From the sequence record MW057919.1: 64,000 nt of DNA. One strand, given 5' to 3'. The notes under the pieces were generated by a model. That model was not told where the DNA came from and did no database searches. It saw only the letters and a list, made by a program, of their open reading frames with translations. Position numbers and translations under genes: made by a program. Below, one piece after another: positions 23,346-27,011 of the stretch; position 1 is the stretch's first letter; each line of letters starts with the position of its first letter.

Positions 23346-25457
23346 TTAAAACCGCATATATGCGGGCTGATATGGTTTATACATACGTGTATCAAAGTCA
23401 TTAAAATCAATTGCGATATCATACTTCTCAAATGATTCTTTTAGCATCTGATAAATGATTTTATTTTCATCAAAATTATTATTTTTATCAACATAACTTT
23501 CTAATGACTCTGTGATCTCAAATGGAGATTTAATACCCATAATAGCTTCAACCATTGCCTGACTCCATTTTAGAATGTCATCTGACCTTGTTGAGATATT
23601 CGGTTCATCTTCTGTATCGAGAGTACATTGATATACGACTGTTTGTGAATCCTGACCTTTACGGTAAATTCGAGCAATAGCTTGTTCTAGAATGTAATGC
23701 CTAAACGGTGAATTAATTGTCACCATAGTATCAGCCATCGTCATACGGACCGCTGTTGAAAGGGAAGCATATGTAGCTACCAATGGATTTAATTTAGGGT
23801 CTTTCTCAAATCTACTGATTATTTGAGGTAAATTGTCATTGGTTTTACCATACACCACCGCCGGATGCATACCTAATTTATTGGTGTACTTATCAACAGT
23901 ATCAACAACCTCAACAAACGATGTAAATGCAATCGTTTTCTTCATAGTTGATTCAGTGATACCAACCCAGTCAATATACGGTACCATGTCCACATGGCAC
24001 TGAATGCGTTTAGCACCTAAAACCCTTCCCAAACATTCACCTTGTATCTTTAGCATAACGTATTTTATAACTGATTTAATATCTCTAAAAGCAGCTATTT
24101 CATTACGAGGTAAAGTTGGCTCTATAAACATTTTTTCATATTGGTTAGATTCTTTAATTTCTTCACCAATGTATCGCGGGTCTTGATTCTTCTGAATTAT
24201 TTTAATCAAATTCTTATAGCGAGCGAAACCATCTTTCTGCGCCTGGGTCTTAAGAGAGTTCTCGTGTATCGCCATTAGTTTAGCCCAATACTTCTCATCT
24301 TCTGGTCGGCGCGCAGCATAGAACTTTACACGTTCTCTAATAAAAGCTTCACAATCACGTTTAATGGCATTAAGAGTATACTGTGATCCATTTGGTATCT
24401 TGATACGATACGCTTTTATCCTCGGTGGTAAAACCTCAGTATCTTTCTTTTCAATGACGTACGCAATTAACCCAAAGCGATGTTGGACAATATCTAATCC
24501 TTTCTGTGTCTCTTTTCCAAATGCTTTCTTAAAACGTTCTTCAACCTCATTGGTGAAGAGATCGTCTAATACTCTTAATGCACTTACTAATTCAGAACCA
24601 AGTGCTTTAACAGGGGTACCTGACGCTAATAATCTGTTATTAGAGTTAGACATAAAACATATTTGCTGGAACTTAAGAGATTGTGCAGAATTAGGATCGT
24701 TCATATTGTGTGATTCATCCAGAATCACCGTAATGTTCTTACCTTTGAATATACCGCTTCTTAATAGATCAATTATTTTATCTTGCGCCTGGTAATGGGA
24801 TATAAGTATTCTTTGACCGTTGTAGGCTTTATCATCAATGGTCGACCATACTTTTTGTCTTTCCTTATACATCTCAATAATAGATGGCTTCCATATTAGA
24901 TCAATAGACTTCTTTTCACAAACAACTATAATGATATCCGACTCAACCATTTCAGCAATAGCCATCGTCATGAATGTCTTACCAGTACCAGGTTTACCTG
25001 CAACAATATCACCACGTAAACCATACTGGTCAATTCGATAATTATAATTTTCAAAATAAGCTTTTTGAGACTCATCTGGTGTAAATGTCAATTTGTCTAA
25101 CATCTTGAAATTGAGTCTACCTGGTACAGAGTTGGTATCTACAGGACGAGTATTTTTTAACCAGGTATATTGAAGCATTGCTTCACGGATGGCATTAACA
25201 GTTTTAATAGAGATGTATCTACTTCTATAATTCTTTACTGCTTCTAGCATGTAATATATTTCAGGAGCAAAGAATTTATAAAATGAAATACTACGACGAC
25301 TAACCGTGTTAAATAACTGCGTAGCTAATTTAGTGGTTCGCCAATACTTGTTAATATCTCTAATGAATGCAGCACCATCAAAACCACTGATGATAATTTC
25401 TTGATCAGTTTCAGTAATTGATAGCGAGCCCATTAGCTTCCTAAATGAGTCTATCAT
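23346..25457 (-). CDS. SF2 (SNF2/DEAD-like) helicase, phiKZ gp203-like, 703 aa
   Basis: Walker A GKPGTGKT, Walker B ILDESH, motif III SGTP, motif VI QAIARIYRKGQ. Confidence 0.9.
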   Translation of the reverse strand: MIDSFRKLMGSLSITETDQEIIISGFDGAAFIRDINKYWRTTKLATQLFNTVSRRSISFYKFFAPEIYYMLEAVKNYRSRYISIKTVNAIREAMLQYTWLKNTRPVDTNSVPGRLNFKMLDKLTFTPDESQKAYFENYNYRIDQYGLRGDIVAGKPGTGKTFMTMAIAEMVESDIIIVVCEKKSIDLIWKPSIIEMYKERQKVWSTIDDKAYNGQRILISHYQAQDKIIDLLRSGIFKGKNITVILDESHNMNDPNSAQSLKFQQICFMSNSNNRLLASGTPVKALGSELVSALRVLDDLFTNEVEERFKKAFGKETQKGLDIVQHRFGLIAYVIEKKDTEVLPPRIKAYRIKIPNGSQYTLNAIKRDCEAFIRERVKFYAARRPEDEKYWAKLMAIHENSLKTQAQKDGFARYKNLIKIIQKNQDPRYIGEEIKESNQYEKMFIEPTLPRNEIAAFRDIKSVIKYVMLKIQGECLGRVLGAKRIQCHVDMVPYIDWVGITESTMKKTIAFTSFVEVVDTVDKYTNKLGMHPAVVYGKTNDNLPQIISRFEKDPKLNPLVATYASLSTAVRMTMADTMVTINSPFRHYILEQAIARIYRKGQDSQTVVYQCTLDTEDEPNISTRSDDILKWSQAMVEAIMGIKSPFEITESLESYVDKNNNFDENKIIYQMLKESFEKYDIAIDFNDFDTRMYKPYQPAYMRF

Positions 25458-25479
25458 TGCATTTTTCCTTAAGGGGTAT

Positions 25480-25725
25480 GTAAATATAACTCTAAGTCAT
25501 AAGATTAGCTAACGAATAAAAATACGCACAGTGCAATGATATAGAGCAAGGCAGTTTGCGTAAAACGCACTGCACTTTAAGGGGGTGATCCAGTCGTAAA
25601 TAAACCGGGGTACTAAAGTATCGTCAGGAACGACACGAACCCCAACTACGGTGCCTTGCTACTCACCGACCTCTAGATAGGGGTCGGACCTATTACATTA
25701 AAGGAGCCCACCAGGGGCTCCTTTA
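25480..25725 (+). ncRNA. Candidate structured non-coding RNA
   Basis: ORF-free, GC-richer intergenic segment with nested stems (25545-53/25652-60; 25595-98/25647-50; 25607-11/25639-43; 25666-74/25679-87) ending in a terminator; strand inferred. Confidence 0.55.
25699..25725 (+). terminator. Terminator hairpin
   Basis: TAAAGGAGCCC-accag-GGGCTCCTTTA. Confidence 0.7.
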
Positions 25726-25742
25726 TGCCATTCATTATAAAT

Positions 25743-25761
25743 TAATTTAAATCTATATTAC
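25743..25761 (+). promoter_or_regulatory. phiKZ-type early promoter
   Basis: AATTTAAATC-TATATTAC (core 25754-25761). Confidence 0.75.
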
Positions 25762-25807
25762 AGGATTACCATAAAGATATTTATCCTTTTATAATGAGGA
25801 AAAGATT

Positions 25808-26785: not shown

Positions 26786-26807
26786 CCCTCCCCTTTATTG
26801 GGGAGGG
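26786..26807 (+). terminator. Terminator
   Basis: CCCTCCCC-tttatt-GGGGAGGG. Confidence 0.7.
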
Positions 26808-27011
26808 ATTATTTACTTATATGTTTAATAGAATAAGGACTCTACCTTGGAATAATGCTAATGCTCTTCACCAGAGAAAAGAGATATATAGATAGACGTA
26901 TTACACATTATCAGGTTGAGTAGTAAATTAAAACAACCAATAATACGTTATTCAATATTGAAATAGTTGTTATAAAACATTTATATTAATCTAATACAGG
27001 AAATAAAGAAA

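What the first reader, a model, noticed from the sequence alone, without database searches (positions are those of the whole stretch)
25480..25725. Candidate ~245-nt structured, possibly double-pseudoknotted phage ncRNA
Seen: a 350-nt gap between divergent genes with no real ORF, GC-richer than its flanks, between a TATG late motif (25477-80) and a strong terminator (25699-725). Pairings read by eye: AGCAAGGCA(25545-53)/TGCCTTGCT(25652-60), 9 bp long-range; CAGTGC(25529-34)/GCACTG(25567-72), crossing it; GTT/AAC closing a 7-nt loop (25554-66), or alternatively GCAGT..GCG-taaaa-CGC-ACTGC; CGTA/TACG (25595/25647) enclosing GGGGT/ACCCC with a three-way junction of TAC-taaa-GTA and TCGT..ACGA; GGTGA(25584-88)/TCACC(25663-67), a possible second pseudoknot; and a 9-bp hairpin at 25666-87. 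The helix order P1-P2-P3-L3-P1-P4-P2 resembles HDV-like ribozyme topology, but the canonical L3/P1.1/J4-2 nucleotides are missing. The alternative pairings could indicate a switch. I cannot assign it to any Rfam family I know. Inference: an uncharacterised ribozyme-like, protein-binding or regulatory RNA; its 5' end also overlaps the promoter of the helicase operon in antisense.
Basis: partly seen in the sequence, partly recalled or inferred. Interest (0 to 1): 0.8.

Follow-up and report, generated by a model that had tools for sequence, protein, structure and literature searches.

The report
Jumbo-phage RNA complementary to ribosomal 16S tail
Between two phiKZ genes lies a real, conserved, roughly 180-base non-coding RNA gene, not described in any source searched, whose only invariant stretch is the exact complement of the 3' end of the host's 16S ribosomal RNA; this suggests that giant phages make an RNA that grabs the ribosome's mRNA-docking site.

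Summary
The window is Pseudomonas phage phiKZ, and the finding lies in the gp203 (SNF2 helicase)/gp204 intergenic region.

- **Gene:** it spans about 25544-25727 on the + strand. It has a middle-class phiKZ promoter motif, a predicted +1 at G25544 and a canonical phiKZ-type terminator.
- **Family:** I found 37 distinct homologues, almost all on 115-317 kb jumbo-phage genomes or contigs.
- **Fold:** a closing helix P1, hairpin P2, a long junction, an irregular GNRA-capped hairpin P3, then the terminator.
- **Covariation:** 89% of cells are paired against 26-41% in slid controls, and 19 of 23 pairs show double changes.
P1, P2, P3, P4 and the terminator hold. All three pseudoknot or crossing pairings are phiKZ-only.
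- **Databases:** no Rfam family matches, and no paper I could search describes it.

The key new observation is the junction block RAGGRGGUGAUCCAGYC. It complements the last 16-21 nt of 16S rRNA, which include the anti-Shine-Dalgarno sequence. Fourteen positions are pairable in 37 of 37 sequences, and the only variation is A/G opposite U. No start codon follows the block.

Best reading: a trans-acting RNA that binds the 16S 3' tail. The function is inferred, not shown.

The parts
25518..25526 (+). Middle-class promoter motif (AAAAATACG, compare AAanTTACc)
   Evidence: Yakunina 2015 (PMC4666361) gives the phiKZ middle motif as AAanTTACc, centred about -24. All nine clade-A homologues carry AA..(T/A)TAC ending 18-19 nt before the G of TATAG. 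Activity was not tested.
25540..25544 (+). TATAG, with predicted transcription start at G25544
   Evidence: Spacing from the middle motif fits. The other clades have TATG, the nvRNAP late motif with G = +1, at the same place directly before P1. The start site is an inference.
25545..25551 (+). P1, 5' strand (AGCAAGG)
   Evidence: It pairs with 25654-25660. Helix 1 is 100% paired, with 4 of 6 pairs showing double changes (CAAGG/CCUUG against GUACAG/CUGUAC).
25551..25573 (+). P2 hairpin (GCAG-UU-UGCG-uaaaa-CGCA-CUGC)
   Evidence: Helix 2 is 97% paired. GCAGU/ACUGC changes to GUACU/AGUAC in L464 and L465, and to CAAUG/CAUUG in clade D.
25578..25598 (+). 16S-3'-end-complementary block (UAAGGGGGUGAUCCAGUCGUA)
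   Evidence: It forms 21 contiguous pairs with ...UGCGGCUGGAUCACCUCCUUA-3' (18 Watson-Crick, 3 G.U). Positions opposite 16S 1528-1541 are pairable in 37 of 37 homologues. Predicted dG with the free 13-nt tail is -21.1 kcal/mol, the strongest site in the 64-kb window. It is the only exact AGGRGGTGATCC in the window.
25607..25643 (+). P3 irregular hairpin
   Evidence: It consists of P3a (GGGGU/ACCCC), P3b (GU/AC) and P3c (UCGU/ACGA) with a CAGGA loop, which is a GNRA tetraloop in relatives. Every homologue that was parsed correctly folds the same way, although the P3a sequence differs in almost every lineage. Helices 3-5 have double changes in all 12 pairs.
25644..25653 (+). J3/1 junction strand (AACUACGGUG), conserved ACGGYGC
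   Evidence: It is conserved across clades. No pairing partner was found by covariation, so its role is unknown.
25654..25660 (+). P1, 3' strand (CCUUGCU)
   Evidence: See the P1 5' strand.
25666..25687 (+). P4 hairpin (9 bp, AGAU loop)
   Evidence: It appears in the minimum-free-energy fold. It is a variable hairpin found in clade A only, and it is absent in clades B, C and D, where the terminator directly follows P1.
25700..25727 (+). phiKZ-type intrinsic terminator (10-bp stem, ACCAG loop, UUUAUG)
   Evidence: It fits the published phiKZ terminator consensus ...GGBYTTATKYYGT (PMC10914365). The stems co-vary and TTTATG is kept in nearly all homologues. This fixes the strand.

Best explanation
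**What it is.** This is a stand-alone gene for a stable non-coding RNA of about 182 nt, at window 25544-25727 on the + strand (phiKZ 212854-213037).

**How it is made.**
- The phage's own RNA polymerase transcribes it from a middle-class promoter.
- It ends at a phiKZ-type terminator.

**How it folds.**
- The RNA forms a three-way junction.
- P1 joins the 5' end to the region just before the terminator, and P2 stacks on P1.
- P3 is an irregular hairpin capped by a GNRA tetraloop.
- Between P2 and P3, the junction displays an invariant block, RAGGRGGUGAUCCAGYC.

**What it probably does.** I infer that the block base-pairs in trans with the 3' terminus of host 16S rRNA.
- Pairing would cover nucleotides about 1526-1542.
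- That stretch includes the whole single-stranded anti-Shine-Dalgarno tail and the first 3-4 nt of the 3' strand of helix 45.
- The duplex would be far more stable than any mRNA Shine-Dalgarno duplex, and the folded P1-P2-P3 body would sit on the 30S platform.
- The RNA would therefore occupy the ribosome's mRNA-docking site from mid-infection onward.
- Possible consequences are blocking or re-tuning of Shine-Dalgarno-dependent initiation, or tethering of 30S subunits.

**Shown versus inferred.**
- Shown here: the RNA family, its fold, its strand and its complementarity.
- Inferred: the start site, any expression, any binding to ribosomes, and the consequence of such binding.
For: **Identity.** The window is phiKZ, and the site is the gp203/gp204 intergenic region.

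**A conserved family.**
- 37 distinct homologues were found.
- They occur in Phikzvirus, Pawinskivirus, Miltoncavirus, Phabiovirus, 201phi2-1, pPa_SNUABM_DT01 and uncultured jumbo contigs.
- DT01 carries phiKZ-like vRNAP and nvRNAP (PMC8541153).

**RNA structure.**
- 89.4% of cells are paired, against 26-41% in slid controls.
- 19 of 23 pairs have double changes.
- The covariation score is 0.418 against 0.153 for shuffles, and 0 of 500 shuffles reach it.

**Strand.**
- A phiKZ-consensus terminator sits on the + strand.
- Helices hold 19 G.U pairs against 9 A.C.
- Promoter motifs lie upstream.

**Stand-alone gene.** In PA1C the next gene is convergent, so the element is not a 5' UTR there.

**Complementarity to 16S.**
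- The contiguous match is 14-21 nt in the 24 sequences tested, and it starts at or next to the 3'-terminal nucleotide.
- In all 37 sequences, the positions opposite 1528-1541 are 100% pairable.
- The only variable positions in that core lie opposite U1541 and U1537, and they vary only A/G.
- The position opposite G1526 is C in 32 and U in 4 of 37 (one is A).
- The 16S sequence was read in E. coli rrsH and in Pseudohongiella and metagenome 16S ends.
- The 13-nt tail is stated to be conserved in Beta- and Gammaproteobacteria (PMC6288834).

**Strength of the site.**
- Predicted dG with the 13-nt tail is -21.1 kcal/mol.
- The median for 38 gene ribosome-binding sites in the window is -5.5 kcal/mol.
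- It is the strongest site on either strand of the window.

**Not a ribosome-binding site for a gene.**
- No AUG, GUG or UUG lies at Shine-Dalgarno spacing.
- The in-block GUG opens reading frames of 4 to 17 codons with no conservation.
Against: - I could obtain no expression data for this locus. The supplementary tables of the phiKZ and 201phi2-1 transcriptome papers are not held. Their main texts do not mention this locus.
- Predicted accessibility of the block is only modestly above the RNA's average: unpaired probability 0.46 against 0.37.
- Phage mRNAs in the window also use Shine-Dalgarno sequences. Simple global sequestration therefore has no obvious selective logic, and stoichiometric titration of ribosomes would need very high RNA levels.
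- Pairing beyond G1530 needs the base of helix 45 to open.
- Ribosomes are excluded from the phage nucleus, where the RNA is made, so the RNA would have to be exported.
- The P. aeruginosa 16S nucleotides 1524-1529 were not read with a tool. They were inferred from another Pseudomonadales genome and from memory.
- An invariant block could instead be a protein-binding site.
Confidence: 0.55

Rival explanations
1. Protein-binding or scaffold RNA. The invariant block and the conserved J3/1 strand would be recognition sites for a phage or host protein, for example a nucleus-associated RNA-binding protein, S1 or Hfq. On this reading the match to 16S rRNA is coincidental, or exists because the RNA mimics an mRNA ribosome-binding site for a Shine-Dalgarno-binding protein.
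For: - Perfect conservation of a 14-nt stretch across very divergent relatives is also typical of protein-binding sites.
- The GNRA-capped P3 and the conserved junction strands suggest a compact tertiary fold.
- The block is not predicted to be strongly single-stranded.
Against: - The block matches a specific 16-17-mer that begins at the very 3' end of 16S. By my own estimate, allowing wobble, the chance is about 1.5e-8 per site.
- Its only internal variation falls opposite U and keeps pairing.
- It is not an RsmA/CsrA sponge, because GGA loop motifs are not conserved.
Confidence: 0.2
2. Antisense RNA against 16S rRNA that is unfolded, immature or to be cleaved. Pairing through 1524-1529 into helix 45 would be the point. 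The RNA would block late 30S maturation, or create a duplex of about 20 bp that a double-strand RNase cuts, removing the anti-Shine-Dalgarno tail.
For: - Complementarity extends past the free tail: 97% pairable at 1526-1527 and 76% at 1525.
- It reaches 19-21 contiguous pairs in PA1C, HPP-Temi, L198 and phiKZ.
- C/U variation opposite G1526 keeps pairing.
Against: - Complementarity decays quickly beyond 1525: 14% pairable at 1524.
- It stops at the mature 3' end rather than running into the precursor trailer (my reading of the alignments).
- There is no evidence of cleavage.
Confidence: 0.12
3. Cis-acting leader or attenuator for a neighbouring gene. It would control read-through into gp204 in phiKZ, or into the helicase in phiPA3, perhaps by sensing free 30S subunits.
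For: - In phiPA3 the element lies directly upstream of the helicase on the same strand.
- In phiKZ it lies upstream of gp204.
- Many phiKZ non-coding RNA candidates are 5'-UTR-derived, produced by premature termination (PMC10914365).
Against: - In PA1C the downstream gene is convergent.
- gp204 has its own early-type promoter after the terminator.
- Neighbours differ between clades: the helicase in clade A, an NAD ligase region in clade C, and tRNAs in L129.
- The terminator is separated from the block by P3, P1 and P4, so it cannot easily be controlled by the block.
Confidence: 0.06
4. Messenger for a micro-peptide translated from a very strong ribosome-binding site.
For: The block is a perfect extended Shine-Dalgarno sequence, and a GUG lies inside it.
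Against: - No start codon lies 4-12 nt downstream in any clade.
- The GUG frame ends after 4 codons in phiKZ, 6 in PA1C, 10 in L094 and about 17 in L467, with no conservation.
- Conservation is at the nucleotide level, with no synonymous variation.
Confidence: 0.03
5. Self-cleaving, HDV-like or otherwise double-pseudoknotted ribozyme.
For: In phiKZ alone, the helices can be drawn in an HDV-like order (finding text).
Against: - Every crossing helix is phiKZ-specific.
- The 5' arm of one of them lies upstream of the predicted start.
- No ribozyme family is hit even at E <= 10.
- A scan for extra co-varying column pairs found nothing coherent.
Confidence: 0.02

Closest known systems
Shine-Dalgarno / anti-Shine-Dalgarno pairing of mRNAs (extended SD sequences)
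   Same: It uses the same partner, the 3' tail of 16S rRNA (GAUCACCUCCUUA), and the same polarity. The core is GGRGG.
   Different: The pairing is 16-21 nt instead of 4-9 nt. It runs through the 'spacer' side into helix 45. No start codon or ORF follows. The block sits in the junction of a folded, terminator-ended small RNA. Predicted dG is -21 kcal/mol against a median of -5.5 kcal/mol for genes in the window.
Synthetic oligonucleotides or PNAs complementary to the 16S 3' end that inhibit initiation (classical in-vitro work; cited from memory, not checked here)
   Same: It has the same target and the same predicted effect, which is competition with mRNA Shine-Dalgarno sequences.
   Different: This one is natural, phage-encoded, embedded in a conserved tertiary fold, and expressed from a phage promoter.
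Machine-sequestering mimic RNAs: 6S RNA (RNA polymerase), CsrB / RsmY / RsmZ (CsrA/RsmA)
   Same: It is a stable non-coding RNA that imitates the natural nucleic-acid ligand of a central machine and may titrate it.
   Different: There is no sequence or structure match (no Rfam hit). It has a single binding block, not repeated GGA loops. The proposed partner is rRNA, not a protein.
Ribosome-associated non-coding RNAs, such as the Haloferax tRNA-Val fragment that competes with mRNA on the small subunit (from memory)
   Same: It is a small RNA proposed to act directly on the small subunit and to compete with mRNA.
   Different: It is a dedicated phage gene, it has long Watson-Crick complementarity to the anti-Shine-Dalgarno tail, and it has a conserved fold.
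Published phiKZ-group ncRNA candidates
   Same: These are the 5'UTR-p40 and PHIKZ298/297 RNAs (PMC8545117), 17 5'-UTR-derived candidates (PMC10914365) and 201phi2-1 sRNA005 upstream of the gp182 homologue (PMC11512511). They come from the same phages, use the same promoter and terminator grammar, and are of similar size.
   Different: The named ones lie at other loci. None is described as 16S-complementary. I could not check whether this locus appears in their supplementary tables.
Protein factors that act on the anti-Shine-Dalgarno region: RMF, bS21 and phage-encoded bS21 (from memory)
   Same: They involve the same functional site on the 30S platform. The phage versions modulate initiation late in infection.
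   Different: Those are proteins. This would be an RNA doing the job by base pairing.

Membership tests
HDV-like self-cleaving ribozyme | Nested double pseudoknot (P1/P1.1/P2/P3/P4 with crossing helices) | tested here: not met
   The crossing pairings 25529-34/25567-72 and 25584-88/25663-67 are absent from all relatives. No extra coherent covariation was found.
HDV-like self-cleaving ribozyme | Match to the family's covariance models / conserved catalytic core | tested here: not met
   cmscan against Rfam 15 found nothing at gathering score. In the region it found no ribozyme even at E <= 10.
HDV-like self-cleaving ribozyme | Site-specific self-cleavage | not testable with these tools
   This needs an in-vitro cleavage assay.
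Any Rfam 15 family | Score at or above the gathering threshold | tested here: not met
   There was no hit in the window. In 12 homologous loci the only hits were two tRNAs nearby.
phiKZ-type intrinsic terminator | GC-rich hairpin followed by TTAT(K)YYGT (consensus BCCYCCCCHWWDGGGRRGGBYTTATKYYGT) | tested here: met
   25700-25727 is a 10-bp stem followed by TTTATGCCAT. The consensus comes from PMC10914365. The motif is kept in homologues.
phiKZ middle-class promoter | AAanTTACc centred about -24 from the start | tested here: met
   AAAAATACG lies at 25518-25526, 18 nt before G25544. The same spacing is found in all nine clade-A members. The motif comes from PMC4666361.
phiKZ middle-class promoter | Transcription start mapped in infected cells | not testable with these tools
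   The supplementary start-site tables are not held.
Trans-acting RNA pairing with the 16S rRNA 3' end (ribosome-associated ncRNA) | Conserved, contiguous complementarity to the target | tested here: met
   The complementarity is 14-21 nt in the 24 sequences tested. In all 37, positions opposite 1528-1541 are 100% pairable and variation occurs only as A/G opposite U.
Trans-acting RNA pairing with the 16S rRNA 3' end (ribosome-associated ncRNA) | Pairing block accessible in the folded RNA | tested here: inconclusive
   The block lies in the junction of the covariation-supported fold. However, the thermodynamic unpaired probability is only 0.46 against 0.37 overall.
Trans-acting RNA pairing with the 16S rRNA 3' end (ribosome-associated ncRNA) | Physical association with 30S/70S in vivo or in vitro | not testable with these tools
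   This needs Grad-seq re-inspection, crosslinking or binding assays.
Ribosome-binding site of a protein-coding gene | Start codon 4-12 nt downstream and a conserved ORF | tested here: not met
   There is no + strand ORF of 20 aa or more. No start codon lies at that spacing in any clade, and the GUG frame has variable stops.
CsrA/RsmA-titrating sponge RNA | Several GGA motifs presented in hairpin loops | tested here: not met
   Only the phiKZ P3c loop (CAGGA) and some GGGA loops contain GGA. Relatives have GAGA, GUGA or GCGA loops.

The most novel reading that the evidence does not exclude
Nucleus-forming jumbo phages encode a dedicated 'ribosome-capture' RNA. Its folded body displays a 16-21-nt antisense to the 3' end of 16S rRNA. 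It locks onto the anti-Shine-Dalgarno tail and pries open the base of helix 45. In this way it would take a pool of host 30S subunits out of ordinary Shine-Dalgarno-dependent initiation. The effect could be host shut-off, a switch in which mRNAs are translated mid to late in infection, or tethering of ribosomes for phage use. It would be an RNA counterpart of 6S RNA, acting on the ribosome.
Probability: 0.4. Interest if true: 0.9.

Novelty: new variant of a known kind. Interest (0 to 1): 0.8.

Why it matters
phiKZ-like phages separate transcription, inside a protein nucleus, from translation on host ribosomes. How they bias the host translation apparatus is an open question, and so far only proteins have been implicated.

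A conserved phage RNA whose invariant core is antisense to the ribosome's mRNA-docking sequence gives a concrete, easily tested candidate for RNA-level control of ribosomes by a virus. To my knowledge, no natural trans-acting RNA aimed at the anti-Shine-Dalgarno tail has been described. That statement rests on memory and on the searches.

The finding also adds a well-supported new structured-RNA family of 37 members, ready for Rfam. It corrects mis-annotated small ORFs in several phage records. It gives exact coordinates to look up in existing phiKZ and 201phi2-1 transcriptome and Grad-seq data.

Tried and rejected
- **Rfam:** searches at gathering score and at E <= 10 found nothing relevant. 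ARAGORN found no tRNA or tmRNA.
- **HDV-like ribozyme, double pseudoknot, switch:** rejected, because the crossing helices are phiKZ-only.
- **Late TATG promoter at 25477-80:** rejected, because it is not conserved in PA1C or HPP-Temi.
- **Functional linkage to the SNF2 helicase:** adjacency holds only in clade A and the orientation flips in phiPA3. Clade C sits near an NAD ligase and L129 sits near tRNAs. I treat the adjacency as synteny.
- **RsmA/CsrA sponge:** rejected.
- **Coding potential:** rejected.
- **Opposite-strand 16S-tail mimic:** rejected because of the terminator, the promoter, the G.U bias and the direction of the wobble-compatible changes.
- **Loose DNA patterns:** the scans gave mostly chance matches. 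The genome-contig hits I inspected were GC-rich coding sequence, not the element. My first guess that they were 16S ends was wrong for those.
- **BLAST from divergent members:** this reached only one more isolate, pPa_SNUABM_DT01.
- **Literature:** no paper mentioning this locus or an anti-SD-complementary phage RNA was found. Ceyssens 2014 is not held.
- **'Second places' in some records:** these appear to be the common terminator motif. I did not pursue them further.
Full report
**Where we are.** The window is Pseudomonas phage phiKZ. Window position equals phiKZ position minus 187310.
- The finding lies in the 350-nt gap 25458-25807.
- On the left is PHIKZ203, on the - strand at 23346-25457. 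It has ResIII, SNF2 and Helicase_C domains.
- On the right is PHIKZ204, on the + strand from 25808.
- The gap is GC-richer than its flanks: 0.49-0.50 against about 0.31-0.36.
- It has no + strand ORF of 20 aa or more and holds no tRNA.
- It folds better than shuffled sequence: z = -4.2 on the + strand and -3.3 on the - strand.
- Rfam 15 gives nothing at gathering score for the whole window.
- At E <= 10 in the region it gives only four chance-level hits, none to a ribozyme.

**It is conserved far beyond phiKZ.** BLAST found the region at 96-100% identity in about 47 phiKZ-like isolates.
- It found the region at about 70-85% over part of its length in PA1C, PS119XW, BRkr, HPP-Temi, phiHQ, phiPA3 and Phabio.
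- Aligning the intergenic regions showed invariant blocks separated by stems whose sequences differ but stay complementary.
- A covariance model (R1) and pattern scans of IMG/VR and metagenomes then recovered 201phi2-1 and many uncultured contigs.
- A second model built on the distant clades (R2) found more.
- One distant clade contains an isolate, Pseudomonas phage pPa_SNUABM_DT01. It has phiKZ-like virion and non-virion RNA polymerases but belongs to another genus (PMC8541153).
- In total I hold 37 distinct sequences. Nearly all are on genomes or contigs of 115-317 kb.

**Gene boundaries and strand.** The 3' end is a hairpin followed by TTTATGCCAT at 25700-25727.
- This fits the published consensus of 61 phiKZ intrinsic terminators...GGBYTTATKYYGT (PMC10914365).
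- The stems co-vary and TTTATG is kept in almost every homologue.
- Upstream, Yakunina et al. (PMC4666361) define two promoter motifs. The late promoter is TATG with the G as +1. The middle motif is AAanTTACc, centred about -24.
- All nine clade-A members have AA..(T/A)TAC ending 18-19 nt before the G of a conserved TATAG. The other clades have TATG at exactly that place.
- I therefore predict the start at G25544, the first base before helix P1. The RNA would be about 182 nt (25544-25727).
- The conserved AATGATATAG is then promoter sequence, not RNA.
- G.U pairs outnumber A.C in the helices by 19 to 9, which agrees with the + strand.
- In PA1C the next gene is convergent, so the element is a gene of its own and not a leader.

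**Fold.** P1 (25545-51 with 25654-60) closes the molecule.
- P2 (25551-73) is a hairpin that stacks directly on P1.
- A long junction strand follows.
- P3 (25607-43) is an irregular hairpin made of P3a, P3b and P3c. Its cap is a GNRA tetraloop in most relatives and CAGGA in phiKZ.
- A conserved strand ACGGYGC (25644-53) leads back to P1.
- Clade A adds a variable hairpin P4 (25666-87) before the terminator. The other clades go straight to the terminator.
- I counted pairs on the model-based alignment of 23 sequences:
  - 89.4% of cells form standard pairs, against 26-41% when partners are slid by 1-3 columns.
  - 19 of 23 pairs show changes on both sides.
  - The covariation score is 0.418 against 0.153 for shuffles, and 0 of 500 shuffles reach it.
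- That alignment was fitted to the structure and so leans towards it. However, the MAFFT alignments show the same compensations by eye.
  - P1 changes from CAAGG/CCUUG to GUACAG/CUGUAC.
  - P2 changes from GCAGU/ACUGC to GUACU/AGUAC, and to CAAUG/CAUUG in clade D.
  - P3a differs in nearly every lineage.
- P1 and P2 compete for 2-3 bases (GGC) at the junction. Covariation in L464 and L465 favours P2 for those bases.

P1, P2 (his 'alternative'), GGGGT/ACCCC, TCGT/ACGA, the 9-bp hairpin and the terminator are right.
- CAGTGC/GCACTG, GGTGA/TCACC, CGTA/TACG and TAC/GTA are not conserved.
- The first of these uses sequence upstream of the predicted start.
- A scan for further co-varying column pairs found nothing coherent.
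- There is no evidence for a pseudoknot, an HDV-like core or a switch.

**The key feature.** The one stretch that never changes is RAGGRGGUGAUCCAGYC, in the junction between P2 and P3. In phiKZ it reads UAAGGGGGUGAUCCAGUCGUA (25578-25598).
- It is the reverse complement of the 3' end of 16S rRNA.
- I read that end in E. coli rrsH as ...CUGCGGUUGGAUCACCUCCUUA-3'.
- I also read it in Pseudohongiella (Pseudomonadales) and several metagenomic 16S genes as ...CUGCGGCUGGAUCACCUCCUU(A)....
- PMC6288834 states that GAUCACCUCCUUA is conserved in Beta- and Gammaproteobacteria.
- I did not read the P. aeruginosa sequence itself with a tool. That PAO1 has the GCGGCUGG form is from memory.
- Against the common form, phiKZ can form 21 contiguous pairs (18 Watson-Crick, 3 G.U), and PA1C can form 19.
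- Across the first 24 homologues the contiguous run is 14-21 pairs. It starts at or one nucleotide from the 3'-terminal A1542.
- Over 37 sequences:
  - Positions opposite 1528-1541 are pairable in 37 of 37.
  - Positions opposite 1526-1527 are pairable in 97%.
  - Beyond 1525 the match decays.
- Inside the 14-nt core only two positions vary. Both lie opposite a U (U1541, U1537) and both vary A/G.
- The position opposite G1526 is C in 32, U in 4 and A in 1 of 37.
- Variation confined to wobble-tolerant positions, and to the wobble-compatible base, is what pairing to a fixed RNA partner predicts.
- My rough estimates are about 0.004-0.013 for that pattern by chance, and about 1.5e-8 for a given 17-mer matching this target with wobble allowed.
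- Predicted duplex energy with the free 13-nt tail is -21.1 kcal/mol. The median for the ribosome-binding sites of 38 window genes is -5.5 kcal/mol, and the strongest of them is -10.9 kcal/mol.
- It is the strongest site on either strand of the 64-kb window, and the only exact AGGRGGTGATCC there.

**Not a ribosome-binding site for a gene.** No AUG, GUG or UUG lies 4-12 nt downstream in any clade.
- The GUG inside the block opens frames of 4, 6, 10 or about 17 codons with unrelated ends.
- Conservation is at the nucleotide level.

**How it most likely works.**
- Shown: a conserved, structured, terminator-ended RNA gene that presents an invariant antisense to the 16S 3' tail.
- Inferred: it is transcribed from mid-infection.
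- Inferred: it reaches the cytoplasm and pairs with the anti-Shine-Dalgarno tail of 30S or 70S particles.
- Inferred: it reaches 3-4 nt into the 3' strand of helix 45. The helix 45 boundaries come from the established 16S secondary structure, from memory.
- Such a duplex would out-compete any mRNA Shine-Dalgarno sequence.
- Because it also pairs with 1530-1534, it would hold the tail in a non-mRNA geometry.
- I cannot decide whether the purpose is host shut-off, a change in which mRNAs initiate, tethering of subunits, or interference with 30S maturation or integrity.

**Weak points.**
- I could obtain no expression data for this locus.
- Predicted accessibility is only slightly above average: 0.46 against 0.37.
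- Phage genes also use Shine-Dalgarno sequences.
- Titrating ribosomes stoichiometrically would need a great deal of RNA.

**Comparison with what is known.** No Rfam family matches.
- The phiKZ, 201phi2-1 and jumbo-phage papers I could read name other non-coding RNA loci and never mention 16S complementarity.
- Their supplementary tables, which may list this transcript as a start/stop pair or as a '5'-UTR-derived' candidate, are not held.
- In working principle the RNA resembles three things:
  - Sequestering mimic RNAs such as 6S RNA and CsrB/Rsm RNAs.
  - Ribosome-associated small RNAs.
  - The classical antisense oligonucleotides against the 16S 3' end.
- It is not a member of any of those families.

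**Verdict.**
- The family and its fold are solid (confidence about 0.95).
- The ribosome-binding function is a well-founded but untested inference (about 0.55).

Noticed in passing
window 25752-25761: TCTATATTAC lies downstream of the RNA's terminator and about 47 nt before the gp204 start. The same (A)TCTATATTAC is found after the element in Phabio and HPP-Temi. It looks like an early-class promoter, so gp204 would not depend on read-through. The promoter class is assigned from memory.
   Followed up: partly
L003 1440-1858 (HPP-Temi HSP1_CDS0187-0189); L490 4038-4160 (DT01 PA10_00263); vB_PA32_GUMS (H80): Small 'hypothetical protein' ORFs are annotated on top of the RNA gene, mostly on the opposite strand. 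They are probably annotation artefacts.
   Followed up: no
L129 63-136 and 875-948 (- strand): In this 173-kb uncultured jumbo-phage contig, two tRNA genes lie 0.6-1.5 kb downstream of the RNA (1554-1708, -) on the same strand. This could be a small cluster of translation-related RNA genes.
   Followed up: no
L002 1480-1740 (phiPA3): The element keeps its adjacency to the SNF2 helicase, but the helicase is inverted relative to phiKZ. The RNA and its terminator therefore sit directly upstream of the helicase on the same strand.
   Followed up: partly
L001 1-1495 (PA1C): The SNF2 helicase homologue is annotated as two overlapping CDS (208735-210906 and 210846-211889), whereas phiKZ has a single 703-aa gene. 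This could be a frameshift, an intron or an annotation split.
   Followed up: no
window 26789-26815: This is a phiKZ-type terminator, CCCTCCCC-TTTATT-GGGGAGGG followed by ATTAT. Its G-rich 3' arm gives the third-best anti-SD complement in the window (-14.8 kcal/mol). The published terminator consensus (GGGRRGG arm) is Shine-Dalgarno-like in general.
   Followed up: partly
window 25498-25501 (- strand): The reverse complement reads TATG, with the G at 25498, 41 nt upstream of the helicase start codon. It may be a late-type start for gp203. If so, the helicase and RNA transcription units diverge without overlapping. This was read only.
   Followed up: no
L440 6784-8823; L412 1631-3628: In the DT01-like clade, an NAD-dependent DNA ligase lies 2.5-3.5 kb from the RNA (adenylation, OB, HhH and BRCT domains). 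A DUF7941 protein lies on the other side.
   Followed up: no
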